Source: Octopus bimaculoides | Taxonomy: Eukaryota | Length of the DNA: 64,000 nt | Assembly: GCF_001194135.2 (NCBI RefSeq) | Contig: NC_068984.1 | Location: 51,792,269 to 51,856,268, forward strand | Direction of reading: 5' to 3' | In this document: positions 22,119 to 28,283 of the stretch, in pieces | How positions within the stretch are numbered: position 1 is the stretch's first letter | Layout: each line of letters begins with the position of its first letter | Translations under genes and position numbers: made by a program | The notes under the pieces: model-generated | What the model saw: the letters and a program-made list of their open reading frames with translations, nothing else | Told to the model about the DNA's origin: nothing | Database searches by the model: none

Positions 22119-22136
22119 CACAGTCATCTTGTCTTG
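22119..22136 (+). CDS. Exon 2, 18-nt micro-exon AQSSCL (phase 1-1)
   Basis: tttttaatttttttgcag|CACAGTCATCTTGTCTTG|gtaagttaaatatatttattat; flanks homologous to exons 3 and 4. Confidence 0.75.
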
Positions 22137-22224
22137 GTAAGTTAAATATATTTATTATCATTATATTAGAAATGATCCATTTCTAAGAGCTTGACAAGCA
22201 TCTTCAGCCAGCTAGTCATGCTAC

Positions 22225-22267
22225 TTCAGGCTGATGACGAGCAAAAACTCAGAAACATATCCCTGAA
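22225..22267 (+). ncRNA. Hammerhead motif in an older copy of the same Penelope-like repeat (about 22180-22430)
   Basis: ttcagg-CTGATGA-cgag caaaaa ctca-GAAA-CATATC-cctgaa; stem I shows compensatory changes versus the 61.5 kb copy; G-to-A change in stem III. Confidence 0.55.
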
Positions 22268-22779
22268 TGCAGGCTAGGCTGGGTGGAGGTGCTTGTCTCC
22301 CCCTTGTAAGCATAAGGACACAGGAAATGTGTCAAGGCCGACAGGAAGCAGTCCAGCTTCCTAGGGCTAAATAGCAGTAGTATGATTCCCTTGTTGGGAC
22401 TGTCACGTTAAGTTGACAGTATACAACTACTTTATTATTATATTAATCATCCATAAACTATATAATTTTTCTCTCCACTTTCTGTTTCTTGATCAAAAGA
22501 AAGAACCCTGGAACTCTCTATCTGCTATATTCATGAACAACATGTAACTCAAAGTTTGATCTTGTGACATATGTCAAATGTCAAACCTAAAAACTTTGAA
22601 TGACTTCTTTTGAAATATATGACAGTAAAATTTCCACACGAAGAATGCTATCTACAGACTTTGTATGTATCAAAAATGATAATCATTACTTTATATGTTT
22701 ATGAATTGCTTCCTCATATGCTAACATGATCACCATATGCTAACCATTTATTTCATGTAGATCTAATCAAGAACTGTCC

Positions 22780-23745
22780 ATCTGACCATCTTTGCCCACT
22801 ATTCCTTGTAAGATTGTGTGATTAGAGTCCTCAGGCAATAGTCATTACACTCTCTAGTTGGGTTTCCAATTGTGACCAACATTCTTGGTCTACCCACTAG
22901 GTCTCTTGCCAGCCAACTTGGCTCAAAGAATCCATCTTGTAATTCTTTCCTGTGACATTCTAGTCACATGTCTGTAGTACCAGAGCTGTGACTTCTCAAT
23001 GCAGAGAAGTAGCAACTCAGCCTGCAGAGAATCTCTGATCTTCAAGTTATGCACCCTGTCTAGTAACATTATCCCAGAGATCCTTCAGAGAAACTCCATT
23101 TTGGCTACTTGTATTAATAGTTGTACTCTTTTGGGCATTACCCAACATTCATGACATAGGTGAGGATAGCACTGGAACAGCCATTCAGACTCACAGGCCT
23201 CACACATGCAGATAGCCATCTTTGCCCTGATAGCAGTGAGCAGGGATGTAGTCTAGGGACCAAGAACATCAGAGTTCTCCACTACCACAGGCTTGACCAC
23301 AAACCTATTGGAGATTGGCCTGTTCTTTGAAAGCTTGCTCCCTTCAGCCTGACAAGCAAAAAAGCCTGGGTTGCTAACTGAAAGCATCAAGTTGCAACTG
23401 GAGAAAGTATCACAACATGTGACATCCAAGATGAGGAACCTACCACTGAGAACAGGAAATTGGTATGCTCTTTGGCCTTTTACCATCTCCTTGGTCTAGC
23501 TGACTAGCTTAAGCTGGGAAAGGATATTTGCAATGTCCAGGCCATGCATTATGATATCATTGGGAACAGCATGGCATGAAAGGCGGCCAGCACTATAATG
23601 ACATGACAATGGGAGGAAGATGAAGGAATCCATGGCAGATGCACAGTGGCATTTGTGAGGGTTGCAGATCTGGGGGCCAAGTGTCAGAGAAACACTGGCA
23701 TGCAAACAGTTGCTAACCAGCTGAGAGTCTATTCAAGAGTGAGCA
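22780..23745 (-). mobile_element. Degenerate RTE LINE 3' ORF fragment
   Basis: Broken translation MEFLxRISGxxLLDRV...WYxHVxRM...RPxGRPR typical of the RTE C-terminus. Confidence 0.7.
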
Positions 23746-24105
23746 TATTCATGGAAATATTGCATTTTAAGACAATGTGTTCACATCTGTCAATAGATGG
23801 CTAAAATTTACACATATATTTTATAGTACAATATAGCAATGAGACAAAGCACCAGTTGTTAATTTCTGGTACATTGCAAATAAAAGAGAATTTTATAATG
23901 ACGTATGTTTGGGCTTTCTCTTGCTTCTTTTCTTCGTTGATAATGAGAATTTGGCAATGACGATGATGATGATAATGACAATGAAAAATAGACAAAGAAG
24001 AAATAAATAATTATAAAAAGTAACTAAAGCACAAATTATTGAGATGAAGAAACTTTATTGGGTAAAAATTAATGACAACAGTCCTCTACTTCTACTCTTA
24101 TAGAT

Positions 24106-24468
24106 TATTGTTGGCACTCTGTCGCTTATGACGTTGAGGGTTCAACGGAACAGCCTGTTCGTGAAATTAACGTGCAAGTGGCTGAGCAATCCACAGACAC
24201 GTGTACCTTTAATGTAGTTCTCGGGGATATTCAGCGTGACACAGTGTGACAAGGCTGACCCTTTGAATACAAGTACAACAGAAACAGGAAGTAATAGTGA
24301 GAGAAAGTTGTGGTGAAAGAGTACAGCAGGGTTCGCCACCATCCCCTGCCGGAGTGGAGCTTTAGGTGTTTTCGCTCAATAAACACTCACAACGCCCGGT
24401 CTGGGAATCGAAACCGCGATCCTATGACCGCGAGTCCGCTGCCCTAACCACTGGGCCATTACGCCTCC
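24106..24468 (-). mobile_element. Young tRNA-derived SINE
   Basis: tRNA-like head with A/B boxes on the minus strand, CpGs retained, 12-bp TSD ACTCTTATAGAT. Confidence 0.85.
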
Positions 24469-24797
24469 ACTCTTATAGATATGATATATATAATTAGAAA
24501 AAGTGTGTTGCATGTACTAAGACATGTCTAGCTGCATGTGAATTTAACCAAATTAATTATCCAGATGATATATAAAAAATTTGTTTGAACACTGGAAAAC
24601 TTCAGTGTACAAAACATTGGTGACTTTTACATCATTGCATTTGCCACATCCTGTATAGTTCTTGTAAGAGCTACATACAACTGTCCATGTACAATTGTCC
24701 CATCAACTGGGAAGAACAGACCTTGTTTGTTCAATGATTGACAGTGAAAATTATTGATGTCATTACAAAAGTCCACTCAAAATAGAAGCTATAATTG

Positions 24798-25025
24798 TAT
24801 GAAGGGATACTGAAAAGTTCGTGGTTTTAAGGATATTGTGAAAGGCCTGGCTGGAGGCCCAACATTCAAAGTTTTTTTACAGGGCTTAGAAAAACTGAAG
24901 GGCCACTACAATAAGTATGTGAATCTGAGAGGGGATAAAATCATAATTAACAATAAAATCATAATTAACTGATCCTCTGTATTTTCTTCAACCCAAAGCC
25001 AGGAACTTTTCAGCACCCCCTCATA
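24798..25025. mobile_element. Mariner-type MITE (partial second copy at about 55883-56016)
   Basis: TA-flanked TIRs gaagggatactgaaaagttc / gaacttttcagcaccccctca. Confidence 0.75.
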
Positions 25026-26470: not shown

Positions 26471-26484
26471 TGTTTTGTAAATAT

Positions 26485-26643
26485 ACCACGATTTTCACTA
26501 GGGTATTAGGGTTAGGGTTTAGGGTTACGGTTAGGGTTAGGATTAGTGTTATGGTTACGGTTTTAGGGTTAGGGTGTTAGGGTTTAGGGTTAGTGTTAGG
26601 ATTAGGGTTGGGTAATTGTGCGGGTGTTAATCTGAAAAATTAC
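26485..26643. mobile_element. Partial copy of the ttaggg-bearing MITE
   Basis: cgattttcactaggg...ttaggg array...gtgcgggtgttaatctgaaaa, matching 12060-12262; abuts an N gap. Confidence 0.7.
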
Positions 26644-27459
26644 AGATATGTGAAAAGTACCGACCCTGCCATCCATTATAACTTTTGTTGTTCTGTTTAA
26701 TATATACATAGATTATGCCTCCAAACTAGTGGTGATGAAGTGTCAAGGTGGATTTTGGAGGCACTAGATGAATCAAAAGAAAAGAAAGTGGGAGTGGGTA
26801 GAGTTTGAAAGAGTGTATGAAAAGATTGTGGGATGGTTAGAGATGGGGAATGGGTGAGGGAGTGAATATGTTGAACAAAAAAGGGCTGTGGAGTGGTTGG
26901 TGATAACTACATATCATGCATACATAAATACCAATTATTCCAGAGTACCACCCTTTCACTGAACCTAGCACAACCATATGCAGGCATGTGGCTCTTCAGC
27001 CCAGATACCATTCTGCAAGCACATTGACAGATGCAACACTCAAACAGGCTCCTGAAACAACTAGCTGAACTGTGAACTTATGTATTTTTCCATGCCTAGT
27101 CAGGCTGCTAGCTGACTTGCAAATTATGTCACACTCATTACAATTATTTATACAGTGTGTGAATGTATGTGTGATTATACTATGTTTCAAAATTTTTCTT
27201 TTCTTTTTTGTCTCTGGTCAGTAAGTGTTATTTCCTATTTGCTTCCATCTAGAAATCAACTTTACTTTTGTGACCTGGATATCAATGTTTTGAAACCGAC
27301 CTATTTTCCTTTACATTTCAGACAGATTCAGCACTGAGTTGCTGAAGTAGAAATATTGTTATAGCAAATATTCTGCTCAATACTATAGATTTGCTTGTCA
27401 ATTACTTGACCATAACCACTTGATCATGCCCCTTAATGGCTGACAATATATGCATCTCT

Positions 27460-27830
27460 GATCAAAAGCACATAGCTCAGTGGTTAGAGCTTCAGGCTCA
27501 CAATCATAAGGTAGTGAGTTTGATTTCCAGACTGGGTTGTGTGTTGTGTTCTTGAGTAAGACGTTTTATTTCATGTTGTTCCAGTTCACTCATCTGTAGA
27601 AATGAGTTGCAATGTCGCTGGAGCAAAGTTGTATCAACCTTTGCTTTTTTCCTTGGATATCACCAGTGGCGTGAAGAGGAGAGGCTGCTGGTCTTCCACA
27701 AAAACAACCTTACCCAGACTTGTGCCTCAGAGGGTAACTTTGTAGGTGTAATCCCATGGTCATTCATGAGCAGGAGTAGTGGGGGAGCATCATAGCCATG
27801 TGTTGAGAGACATTCTTTGGGGTTTGAATA
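27460..27830 (+). mobile_element. tRNA-derived CORE-like SINE (family E; others about 32490, 41295, 51990, 56615)
   Basis: tRNA head followed by cagttcactcatctgtagaaatgag, similar to the CORE domain. Confidence 0.65.
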
Positions 27831-28034
27831 AATGTAACAAAAGCAAAGTTTGAAGGAAACATTTTTCATAGTTTCTAGGGGTAAGCAGATAGGAAATAAC
27901 AGTTGCCACTTAGGGATAAAAGTTGTATTACACAGTGTTATTTGTATGTTTAAGTGCCTGTAGCCACTCTACAACCTTTTTGTAGAGTATGAAAGGAGGA
28001 CTGTGATGTTGATATGTATCACCTGCTGACCAAC

Positions 28035-28069
<35 letters not shown>

Positions 28070-28259
28070 AGAGAGAGAGAGAGAGAGAGAGTATTCCTCT
28101 GGATACATCATAATCAATTTTAGTAGGGTAATTTTTCAGCTAAAGGACTCAACAGATATATCTGTACATATGCGTACCAAATGACTTCACATGCATACTC
28201 ATAGCAATGCAATTTTATTGAATTTAAGTAATATTATTCTTTGTTTCTTTCTCTTTCAG

Positions 28260-28283
28260 CACAAGAAGAGATTGTTTGTAAAG
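28260..28283 (+). CDS. Exon 4, 24-nt micro-exon AQEEIVCK (phase 1-1)
   Basis: ttgtttctttctctttcag|CACAAGAAGAGATTGTTTGTAAAG|gtaagttaaatgtatatttatt. Confidence 0.8.

What the first reader, a model, noticed from the sequence alone, without database searches (positions are those of the whole stretch)
22119..28283. Triplicated, frame-symmetric, single-cysteine micro-exons right after the signal peptide: a possible combinatorial N-terminal cap
Seen: three micro-exons of 18, 21 and 24 nt (AQSSCL, DDEPNCN, AQEEIVCK), each phase 1-1, each with one Cys near its 3' end, each followed by gtaagttaaat(g)tatatttatt and homologous intron, so they arose by tandem duplication of an exon plus intron unit. Any of the 8 inclusion combinations keeps the frame but changes mature N-terminal length, charge and Cys parity (free thiol or dimerisation versus internal disulfide). 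Known: this signal-exon plus symmetric micro-exon layout is the hallmark of schistosome micro-exon genes (MEGs), which diversify secreted proteins by splicing. Inference: an analogous diversification module on a cephalopod GAIN-domain protein. More units could be hidden in the N gaps at 21820-22030 and 25811-26470.
Basis: partly seen in the sequence, partly recalled or inferred. Interest (0 to 1): 0.85.

Follow-up and report, generated by a model that had tools for sequence, protein, structure and literature searches.

The report
Three duplicated micro-exons in octopus receptor
Three tiny, tandemly duplicated exons (18, 21 and 24 bases) really do sit right after the signal-peptide exon of an Octopus bimaculoides adhesion GPCR gene, but every protein on record for this gene contains all three, so the proposed mix-and-match splicing has no support so far.

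Summary
The micro-exons lie at 22119-22136, 25196-25216 and 28260-28283. All are phase 1-1, each has one TGT Cys codon, each ends G|GTAAGTTAAAT, and they share collinear intron homology.

They are coding exons 2-4 of a 29-exon Octopus bimaculoides gene on CM046604.1. RefSeq calls it 'adhesion G protein-coupled receptor L4' (XP_014769618.1 and XP_052823013.1). Pfam finds GPS and 7tm_2, and the protein aligns to the ADGRL3 GAIN+7TM region.

Both RefSeq isoforms and the UniProt fragment A0A0L8HT67 start MNPAK...LLAAT-AQSSCL-DDEPNCN-AQEEIVCK-EHFSS. The two RefSeq isoforms differ only at the C-terminus. No exon-skipping product appears in the 90% cluster.

- **Supported:** the exons are real, they arose by tandem duplication, and the host is a GAIN-domain receptor.
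- **Not supported:** combinatorial inclusion and the schistosome MEG analogy. The micro-exons make up 2.5% of the coding sequence of an 830-856 aa receptor.
- **Mutually exclusive use:** contradicted by the annotated products.

The exon interiors are only 50-57% identical between copies, while the 40 nt after each donor are 82-85% identical. A 15-nt intronic element is invariant in all three units. These features suggest constraint on splicing signals but little on the peptide apart from the Cys.

The assembly gaps lie inside introns and are still open in the public assembly. Regulated skipping has not been tested. Interest is modest.

The parts
15834..15909 (+). Coding exon 1: start codon and signal-peptide-like segment MNPAKNTLVTLFFVVIFMDMLLAAT. 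It ends in phase 1 at CAG|GTAAGT.
   Evidence: Read. Confirmed by the exact spliced alignment of XP_014769618.1. Its donor is the top-scoring one in the window.
22119..22136 (+). Micro-exon A, coding exon 2: 18 nt, phase 1-1, encodes (A)QSSCL. Its 3' splice site is ...CTCTTTTTAATTTTTTTGCAG.
25196..25216 (+). Micro-exon B, coding exon 3: 21 nt, phase 1-1, encodes (D)DEPNCN. Its 3' splice site is ...TCTCTTGCAG.
28260..28283 (+). Micro-exon C, coding exon 4: 24 nt, phase 1-1, encodes (A)QEEIVCK. Its 3' splice site is ...CTCTTTCAG.
22137..22168 (+). Conserved donor-proximal intron of unit A (GTAAGTTAAATATATTTATTAT...). The matching stretches are about 25217-25256 in B and about 28284-28322 in C.
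   Evidence: The 12-nt run GGTAAGTTAAAT is invariant in all three units. Pairwise identity over +1..+40 is 82-85%.
22526..22574 (+). Conserved intronic element of unit A: TATATTCATGAACAA ... GATCTTGTGACATATGT.
25352..25399 (+). The same conserved intronic element in unit B, 135 nt after the donor. B is the unit not interrupted by a repeat insertion.
28667..28715 (+). The same conserved intronic element in unit C.
22186..22435 (+). Dispersed repeat inserted into unit A after the duplication.
   Evidence: 87-88% identical copies at 61043-61259(-) and 61526-61742.
28387..28548 (+). Dispersed repeat inserted into unit C after the duplication.
   Evidence: Copies at 55296-55447(-) and 42121-42266(-).
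21820..22030 (.). Assembly gap inside intron 1, 88 nt upstream of micro-exon A.
   Evidence: Unchanged in GCA_001194135.2.
25811..26470 (.). Assembly gap inside intron 3, between micro-exons B and C. Its right edge is a degenerate (TTAGGG)n array at 26506-26613.
33471..33641 (+). Coding exon 5: 171 nt, phase 1-1, contains 3 Cys.
37703..37878 (+). Coding exon 6: 176 nt, phase 1 to 0, contains 6 Cys. This exon was the query that recovered the annotated protein.

Best explanation
**What it is**
These are coding exons 2, 3 and 4 of an Octopus bimaculoides adhesion GPCR gene. RefSeq names it 'adhesion G protein-coupled receptor L4'. The gene has 29 coding exons spread over about 80 kb.

**How it arose**
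An ancestral unit was duplicated in tandem twice. The unit held one micro-exon, at least about 90 nt of upstream intron and at least about 230 nt of downstream intron. Transposable elements later inserted into and between the copies, and the spacers are now about 3 kb.

**How it works**
- All three copies kept very strong splice signals: a pyrimidine tract plus AG, and G|GTAAGT.
- All three kept a length that is a multiple of three and one Cys codon two codons before the donor.
- The rest of each exon drifted about as fast as intron sequence.
- In every product on record the three exons are spliced in series. The mature ectodomain therefore begins (A)QSSCL-DDEPNCN-AQEEIVCK, 21 residues with three Cys, followed directly by three more Cys from exon 5.

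**Most likely role (inferred, not shown)**
The stretch is a short, sequence-tolerant N-terminal extension of the ectodomain that supplies cysteines. It is included constitutively or nearly so, rather than acting as a combinatorial diversity generator.
For: **Sequence and frame**
- The exons, their splice sites and their phases were read directly, and all combinations stay in frame.

**Duplication**
- Homology statistics are and the collinear second block.
- The sequences that interrupt units A and C are dispersed repeats with other copies in the window.

**Annotation**
- Searching the representative library with exon 6 returned an 830-aa protein at 100% identity. Its N-terminus is exon 1 + A + B + C + exon 5.
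- Its 90% cluster holds only three members: XP_052823013.1, XP_014769618.1 and A0A0L8HT67, all from O. bimaculoides.
- All three are identical through the micro-exon region. The two RefSeq isoforms differ only at the C-terminus.
- An exact spliced alignment of the 856-aa isoform to GCA_001194135.2 reproduces all 29 exons, including the three micro-exons.

**Receptor identity**
- Pfam GPS 3.8e-13 and 7tm_2 5.5e-35.
- Residues 317-789 align to the ADGRL3 GAIN+7TM region at 9.5e-58.

**Constraint pattern**
- Splice sites score in about the top 1%.
- Exon identity is 50-57% against 82-85% for the 40 nt after the donor (Fisher p of about 0.014-0.022).
- Invariant runs of 12 and 15 nt exceed column shuffles (P=0.00035).
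Against: - RefSeq XP records and the UniProt entry are computational gene models. The transcript evidence behind them could not be inspected here. Saying that exons of 18-24 nt need spliced RNA alignments to be called at all is my inference from how such pipelines work.
- The absence of an annotated skipping isoform is weak evidence for constitutive inclusion, especially if the gene is poorly expressed.
- Several features fit regulated micro-exons equally well: lengths in multiples of three, conserved flanking introns, and a UCUC...UGC-AG acceptor context in A and B.
- The exon is not significantly more diverged than the intron taken as a whole (p=0.08-0.15).
- The role of the 21 residues is inferred only. 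There was no domain match and no usable structure model.
Confidence: 0.6

Rival explanations
1. The three symmetric micro-exons are independent cassette exons. Up to eight inclusion patterns would give N-termini that differ in length, charge and number of cysteines. This would be a MEG-like diversification module on a receptor.
For: - All eight combinations keep the frame, and each exon changes the Cys count by one.
- With all three included, the N-terminal fragment has 19 Cys, an odd number.
- The introns flanking the exons are conserved between copies.
- Adhesion GPCR ectodomains are known for extensive alternative splicing (PMC13197933).
Against: - All three products on record, which appear to come from two different annotation efforts (RefSeq and the UniProt entry), contain A+B+C. 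No skipping isoform is in the 90% cluster.
- Staying in frame follows automatically from duplicating a phase 1-1 exon whose length is a multiple of three. It is not evidence of use.
Confidence: 0.12
2. Regulated micro-exons of the tissue-specific kind, for example neural and SRRM/eMIC-dependent. One or more of the three would be skipped or included as a switch in particular tissues. Inclusion could be coordinated rather than combinatorial.
For: - All three are 27 nt or shorter and multiples of three, with strong 5' splice sites.
- A and B have UCUC followed by UGC directly before the AG. This matches the bipartite intronic enhancer described for SRRM3/4 micro-exons (bioRxiv 10.1101/2024.09.17.613571).
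- The donor-proximal intron and a 15-nt intronic element are conserved between the copies.
Against: - C has no UGC next to its AG.
- The A/B motif is probably one feature inherited from their common ancestor, so it does not count twice.
- No annotated isoform lacks any of the exons.
- No expression data could be reached.
Confidence: 0.2
3. Mutually exclusive splicing of tandemly duplicated exons, with one of A, B or C chosen per transcript as in Dscam-type clusters.
For: - Tandemly duplicated homologous exons are the classic substrate for mutually exclusive choice (PMC9013439, PMC6071210).
- Conserved intronic elements exist that could in principle act as selector sequences.
Against: - The annotated mRNAs contain all three exons in series.
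- The exon lengths differ.
- A scan for a docking site complementary to all three units found nothing beyond a control region: best -23.0 kcal/mol in intron 1 and -22.6 in intron 4, against -22.6 in the control.
Confidence: 0.03
4. Not functional exons. On this view they are chance AG...GT segments inside a repeated intronic element that annotation pipelines picked up wrongly.
For: - No transcript data were inspected directly.
- The peptide sequence apart from Cys is poorly conserved between the copies.
Against: - Three diverged copies each retain top-1% acceptor and donor sites, a length that is a multiple of three, an open frame and the Cys codon.
- The RefSeq models and the UniProt model include the same exons.
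- No other copy of the unit exists in the 64 kb.
Confidence: 0.04

Closest known systems
Schistosome micro-exon genes (MEGs)
   Same: A signal-peptide exon is followed by very short exons whose lengths are multiples of three, separated by kilobase-scale introns. The gene product is exposed on the outside of the cell (PMC4350168, PMC10526429).
   Different: - In MEGs most of the coding sequence is micro-exons (10-20 of them), the proteins are small and secreted, the family is described as restricted to platyhelminths, and exon skipping has been demonstrated.
- Here there are 3 symmetric micro-exons among 29 exons, 2.5% of the coding sequence, in an 830-856 aa 7TM receptor, and no skipping is on record.
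- The nearest schistosome parallel is VAL-6, a conventional gene with a MEG-like portion (PMC4350168).
Adhesion GPCRs with alternatively spliced N-terminal tandem exons (EGF-TM7 receptors such as ADGRE5/CD97; latrophilin splice sites)
   Same: The receptor class is the same (GPS, 7tm_2, GAIN homology). Tandemly repeated phase 1-1 exons follow directly after the signal peptide. The class is known for ectodomain splicing (PMC13197933). The CD97 EGF-exon example comes from my own knowledge.
   Different: In those receptors each repeated exon encodes a folded domain of about 40-50 aa, and the isoforms are documented experimentally. Here each exon encodes 6-8 residues with a single Cys, and no isoform differs in this region.
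Bilaterian micro-exons (27 nt or shorter, often SRRM3/4-dependent)
   Same: Shared features are size, length in multiples of three, strong 5' splice sites, UCUC...UGC before the AG in A and B, and conserved flanking introns.
   Different: Classic micro-exons are single, conserved between species, and shown to switch in neural tissue. These are a lineage-level tandem triplet with fast-evolving content, and their regulation is unknown.
Tandem exon duplication
   Same: This is duplication of an exon plus its flanking intron within a gene. About 10% of animal genes are reported to contain such duplicates (PMC9013439).
   Different: Such duplicates are often linked to mutually exclusive choice. Here all copies are retained in series in the annotated mRNAs, which lengthens the protein by short repeats.

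Membership tests
Schistosome micro-exon genes (MEG) | Most of the coding region consists of very small symmetric exons (PMC4350168), typically 10-20 exons of 6-81 bp (PMC10526429). | tested here: not met
   The three micro-exons total 63 of 2571 coding nt (2.5%). They are 3 of 29 coding exons. One further tiny exon of 20 nt is not symmetric.
Schistosome micro-exon genes (MEG) | A 5' exon encodes a signal peptide. | tested here: inconclusive
   Exon 1 encodes MNPAKNTLVTLFFVVIFMDMLLAAT, which looks like a basic n-region plus a hydrophobic core when read by eye. No signal-peptide predictor was available.
Schistosome micro-exon genes (MEG) | Micro-exon lengths are multiples of three with symmetric phases. 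| tested here: met
   Lengths are 18, 21 and 24 nt, and all three exons are phase 1-1.
Schistosome micro-exon genes (MEG) | The product is a small secreted or membrane-anchored protein, and the family is restricted to platyhelminths. | tested here: not met
   The product is an 830-856 aa receptor with GPS and 7tm_2 domains from Octopus bimaculoides.
Schistosome micro-exon genes (MEG) | Exon skipping generates a pool of protein variants. | not testable with these tools
   No RNA data could be reached. The three products on record all contain all three exons.
Adhesion GPCR (class B2) | A GPS motif and GAIN domain lie directly before a secretin-type 7TM domain. | tested here: met
   - Pfam GPS covers residues 480-523 (3.8e-13) and 7tm_2 covers 534-769 (5.5e-35).
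- Residues 317-789 align to ADGRL3 (9.5e-58), and residues 314-517 align to the latrophilin-1 structure 4dlq.
- The motif CVCNHLTSFAILM is present.
- Only part of the GAIN region lies inside the window. The GPS and 7TM parts lie beyond position 64000.
Mutually exclusive tandem exons | One and only one exon of the cluster appears in each mature transcript. | tested here: not met
   The annotated products contain A, B and C in series.
Mutually exclusive tandem exons | Competing RNA structures: one docking site complementary to a selector sequence in each unit. | tested here: inconclusive
   The duplex scan of introns 1 and 4 against all three units gave nothing beyond the control region. A docking site could lie inside a gap.
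SRRM3/4-type micro-exons | Length of 27 nt or less, a strong 5' splice site, and a UCUC...UGC enhancer between the branch point and the AG. | tested here: inconclusive
   Size and 5' splice-site strength are met for all three. UGC directly before the AG is present in A and B but not in C.
SRRM3/4-type micro-exons | Tissue-specific (neural) inclusion that depends on the eMIC domain protein. | not testable with these tools
   No expression or perturbation data are available here.

The most novel reading that the evidence does not exclude
The three micro-exons would be included differentially across octopus tissues or cell types, possibly through the conserved donor-proximal and +135-nt intronic elements and the UGC-type acceptors. 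One octopus adhesion GPCR would then present several N-terminal variants that differ in length, charge and free-cysteine status. That would be a small MEG-like diversification module that evolved independently in a cephalopod receptor.
Probability: 0.12. Interest if true: 0.6.

Novelty: new member of a known kind. Interest (0 to 1): 0.28.

Why it matters
As it stands, this is a tidy example of tandem micro-exon duplication lengthening the N-terminus of a cephalopod adhesion GPCR. The splice signals and a single Cys are held constant while the rest of each exon drifts. Class B (secretin/adhesion) GPCRs are expanded in octopus (PMC6408891), and how their ectodomains diversify is an open question. 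If junction data showed regulated or combinatorial inclusion, the locus would become a compact model for two things: how 18-24-nt exons are defined, and how a receptor's extreme N-terminus is tuned. Without such data it is an already annotated gene feature of modest interest.

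Tried and rejected
1. **Word-indexed protein searches.** Searches with the spliced N-terminus and with a 361-aa exon chain returned nothing. For a while this suggested the gene was unannotated. 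A control with a reverse-transcriptase ORF showed that cephalopod proteomes are in the database. The exhaustive search with exon 6 alone then found the protein. The two earlier negatives were tool misses.

2. **Pfam on raw reading-frame pieces.** Scanning stop-free plus-strand pieces from 53-64 kb, and Pfam and PDB searches on my partial spliced model, found no GAIN domain. The GPS and 7TM parts lie beyond the window. The full protein settled the question.

4. **Dscam-type docking/selector test.** No signal stood out above the control region.

5. **A fourth unit fused into exon 5.** Exon 5 has the peptide AQSKKC and a pyrimidine-rich start, which suggested a fused unit. Local DNA alignments to the three units were no better than shuffled sequence, so I rejected the idea.

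6. **Cys-parity argument for constitutive inclusion.** Exons 5 and 6 have 9 Cys, so adding 1 or 3 gives an even number. I withdrew the argument because the whole N-terminal fragment has 19 Cys with all three exons included.

7. **Structure prediction.** AlphaFold2 on the single sequence gave mean pLDDT 38 and pTM 0.27, which is not usable.

8. **Further units.** Searches for more copies or degenerate copies between exon 1 and exon 5 found none in readable sequence.

9. **Literature.** Searching for the accessions returned no paper.

10. **Skipped step.** I did not run exact look-ups of hypothetical skipping isoforms. The 90% cluster listing already shows that none is on record.

Full report
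**1. The observation**

Reading 21700-28500 shows three short segments on the plus strand. Each follows a pyrimidine tract plus AG, and each is followed by GTAAGTTAAAT.
- A: 22119-22136, cacagtcatcttgtcttg, 18 nt.
- B: 25196-25216, atgatgaacctaattgtaatg, 21 nt.
- C: 28260-28283, cacaagaagagattgtttgtaaag, 24 nt.

The pattern GTAAGTTAAAT occurs exactly at 22137, 25217 and 28284. The upstream exon at 15834-15909 encodes MNPAKNTLVTLFFVVIFMDMLLAAT and ends with one base of a split codon at CAG|GTAAGT. The next large exon, 33471-33641, is open only in the matching phase. In that frame the three segments read (A)QSSCL, (D)DEPNCN and (A)QEEIVCK. Each has one TGT codon two codons before the donor, and all eight inclusion patterns stay in frame.

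**2. More than chance**

The three units are homologous.
- B vs C: 178 bp at 74.7% identity, E=1e-26.
- C vs A: 135 bp at 68%, E=2e-5.
- A vs B: 40 bp at 87.5%, E=8e-9.

A second collinear block lies further into each intron: 22492-22576, 25302-25412 and 28612-28729. The sequences that separate the blocks in A (22186-22435) and C (28387-28548) are dispersed repeats with other copies in the window. They inserted after the duplication. The ancestral unit therefore held at least about 90 nt of upstream intron, the exon, and about 230 nt of downstream intron. No further copy exists in the readable 64 kb.

With a simple position-weight score, the acceptor and donor of all three rank in about the top 1% of all AG/GT dinucleotides in the window. 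With both sites scoring at least 4.4, the only acceptor-donor pairs 6-36 nt apart on either strand are A and C, and B's acceptor falls just under that cut-off.

**3. The assembly gaps**

Gap 25811-26470 lies inside the intron between B and C. Gap 21820-22030 lies in intron 1, 88 nt before A. Neither can change the reading frame. Both are present, at the same sizes, in the public chromosome-scale assembly GCA_001194135.2, so they cannot be resolved here. The right edge of the larger gap is a degenerate (TTAGGG)17 array. The left flank of the smaller gap is dispersed repeat. The annotated mRNA models join B to C across the gap. A further unit whose length is a multiple of three, hidden in a gap, would not disturb the gene model, so it cannot be excluded.

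**4. What the gene is**

Two word-indexed protein searches with spliced models found nothing. A control showed that cephalopod proteomes are in the database. An exhaustive search with exon 6 alone (window 37705-37878) then returned an 830-aa protein at 100% identity.

Its sequence begins MNPAKNTLVTLFFVVIFMDMLLAAT AQSSCL DDEPNCN AQEEIVCK EHFSS.... Its 90% cluster has three members:
- XP_052823013.1, 'adhesion G protein-coupled receptor L4 isoform X2', Octopus bimaculoides, 830 aa.
- XP_014769618.1, isoform X1, 856 aa.
- UniProt A0A0L8HT67, 107 aa.

The gene lies on CM046604.1 at 51,798,102-51,898,200 (locus plus flanks), and the window is the same sequence. An exact spliced alignment of the 856-aa product reproduces 29 coding exons with canonical GT-AG boundaries. 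The micro-exons are exons 2-4.

Pfam finds GPS (3.8e-13) and 7tm_2 (5.5e-35). Residues 317-789 align to the ADGRL3 GAIN+7TM region at 9.5e-58, and residues 314-517 align to the latrophilin-1 entry 4dlq. Residues 26-313 match no known domain.

**5. Splicing mode**

The two RefSeq isoforms are identical over the first 824 residues and differ only in the C-terminal tail. The UniProt fragment is exons 1-5 followed by read-through into intron 5 (SKTF*) (ORF). All three products contain A, B and C in series. No product lacking any of them is in the cluster, where a 97-99% identical skipping isoform would be expected to fall.

This contradicts mutually exclusive use and gives no support to combinatorial use. 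It is not proof of constitutive inclusion, for two reasons. These are computed models whose RNA evidence I could not inspect, and a poorly expressed gene may have too little coverage for minor isoforms to be called. That 18-24-nt exons appear in the RefSeq models and in the UniProt model suggests spliced transcript support. That is my inference from how such pipelines work.

A scan for a Dscam-type docking site complementary to all three units found nothing beyond a control region.

**6. Constraint pattern**

The three-way alignment of the collinear cores has 336 columns, of which 41% are invariant. It contains two long invariant runs:
- GGTAAGTTAAAT at the donor (12 nt).
- TATATTCATGAACAA inside the intron (15 nt), 135 nt after the donor in the uninterrupted unit B.

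Column shuffles reach a run of 15 in 0.035% of trials and never give two runs of at least 12. Both this element and a nearby GATCTTGTRAYAWATGT occur only in the three units.

Codon-anchored identity inside the exons is 50-57%. The first 40 intronic nt after the donor are 82-85% identical (Fisher p of about 0.014-0.022). Intron sequence overall is 65-74% identical, which is not significantly different from the exons (p=0.08-0.15).

The picture is constraint on splice signals, on a donor-proximal element, on exon length and on the Cys codon, with little constraint on the other residues.

A and B carry UCUC followed by UGC directly before the AG, while C does not. This resembles the enhancer described for SRRM3/4-dependent micro-exons. 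It is a lead for regulated inclusion and nothing more.

**7. Comparison with known systems**

*Schistosome MEGs.* MEGs are defined by most of the coding region being tiny symmetric exons. They encode small secreted proteins, they show demonstrated exon skipping, and they are described as restricted to platyhelminths (PMC4350168, PMC10526429). Here the symmetric micro-exons are 2.5% of the coding sequence of a 7TM receptor, so membership fails. The resemblance is limited to 'a signal exon followed by short exons in multiples of three'. Phase 1-1 symmetry after a phase-1 signal exon is the usual arrangement for extracellular exons (my own knowledge).

*Closer relatives in kind.*
- Tandem exon duplication in general (PMC9013439).
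- Bilaterian micro-exons.
- The well-known splicing of adhesion GPCR ectodomains (PMC13197933), including the EGF-TM7 receptors, in which tandem phase 1-1 EGF exons after the signal peptide are used in different combinations (my own knowledge).

*Cephalopod context.* Octopus-specific expansions of class B GPCRs, one group of which was annotated as adhesion GPCRs, are documented (PMC6408891). No paper mentions these accessions.

**8. Cysteines**

With all three micro-exons included, the N-terminal fragment up to the GPS site has 19 Cys. Four of them are the GPS cysteines. The other 15 include Cys30, Cys37 and Cys45 from the micro-exons, Cys54, Cys64 and Cys69 from exon 5, and six from exon 6. 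The total is odd even with all three present, so parity does not argue for any splicing model. A single-sequence AlphaFold2 model was unusable (pLDDT 38).

**9. Verdict**

- *Supported.* The units arose by duplication, they are real exons, and the host gene is a GAIN-domain adhesion GPCR.
- *Not supported.* The combinatorial, MEG-like interpretation is not supported by the only isoform information available, and the locus does not qualify as a MEG.
- *Status of the feature.* It is already part of public gene models but does not seem to have been described. It is a new member of known kinds: tandem exon duplication, and micro-exons in an adhesion GPCR N-terminus.
- *Interest.* Modest, unless junction data show regulated inclusion.

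Noticed in passing
window 22526-22574, 25352-25399, 28667-28715: An invariant 15-nt intronic element, TATATTCATGAACAA, is followed by GATCTTGTRAYAWATGT downstream of each micro-exon and occurs nowhere else in the window. Its core TTCATGAA is a palindrome and also occurs about 35 nt after the donor in units B and C. Its function is unknown. It may be a splicing element or a gene-conversion patch.
   Followed up: partly
window 49080-49099: The same gene has a fourth tiny exon, coding exon 10. It is 20 nt and runs from phase 1 to phase 0, so skipping it would break the frame. It lies after a 49-nt exon at 44957-45005.
   Followed up: partly
window 33642-33655: UniProt A0A0L8HT67 (107 aa) equals exons 1-5 plus read-through of the exon 5 donor (SKTF, then stop). 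This is either a truncated gene model or an intron-retaining transcript. If it is real, it would encode a small secreted protein consisting of the signal peptide plus the six-Cys N-terminus.
   Followed up: no
window 26506-26613 (related copy at 12061-12261): A degenerate interstitial (TTAGGG)17 array sits directly at the right edge of the 660-nt assembly gap. A related copy lies elsewhere in the window, so it is probably part of a dispersed repeat.
   Followed up: partly
window 14349-14777 (-): A remnant ORF of a Pif1-type (Helitron-like) helicase (Pfam Pif1_2B, 2e-6) lies about 1 kb upstream of the receptor's start codon.
   Followed up: partly
window 30462-31208 (-), within intron 4: A reverse-transcriptase ORF (RVT_1, 2e-12) has relatives annotated in Octopus bimaculoides and Acanthosepion pharaonis. 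It is a retroelement inside the intron between micro-exon C and exon 5.
   Followed up: partly
window 33471-33641 (exon 5): The exon 5 peptide contains AQSKKC, the same AQ-x-C pattern as micro-exons A and C. DNA alignment to the three units is no better than shuffled sequence, so any relationship is unproven.
   Followed up: yes
tool behaviour, versus 62 and 64: The word-indexed protein search did not return XP_052823013.1 or XP_014769618.1 even for queries that match them at 100%, although both are in the collection. Negative results from that tool should not be read as absence.
   Followed up: yes
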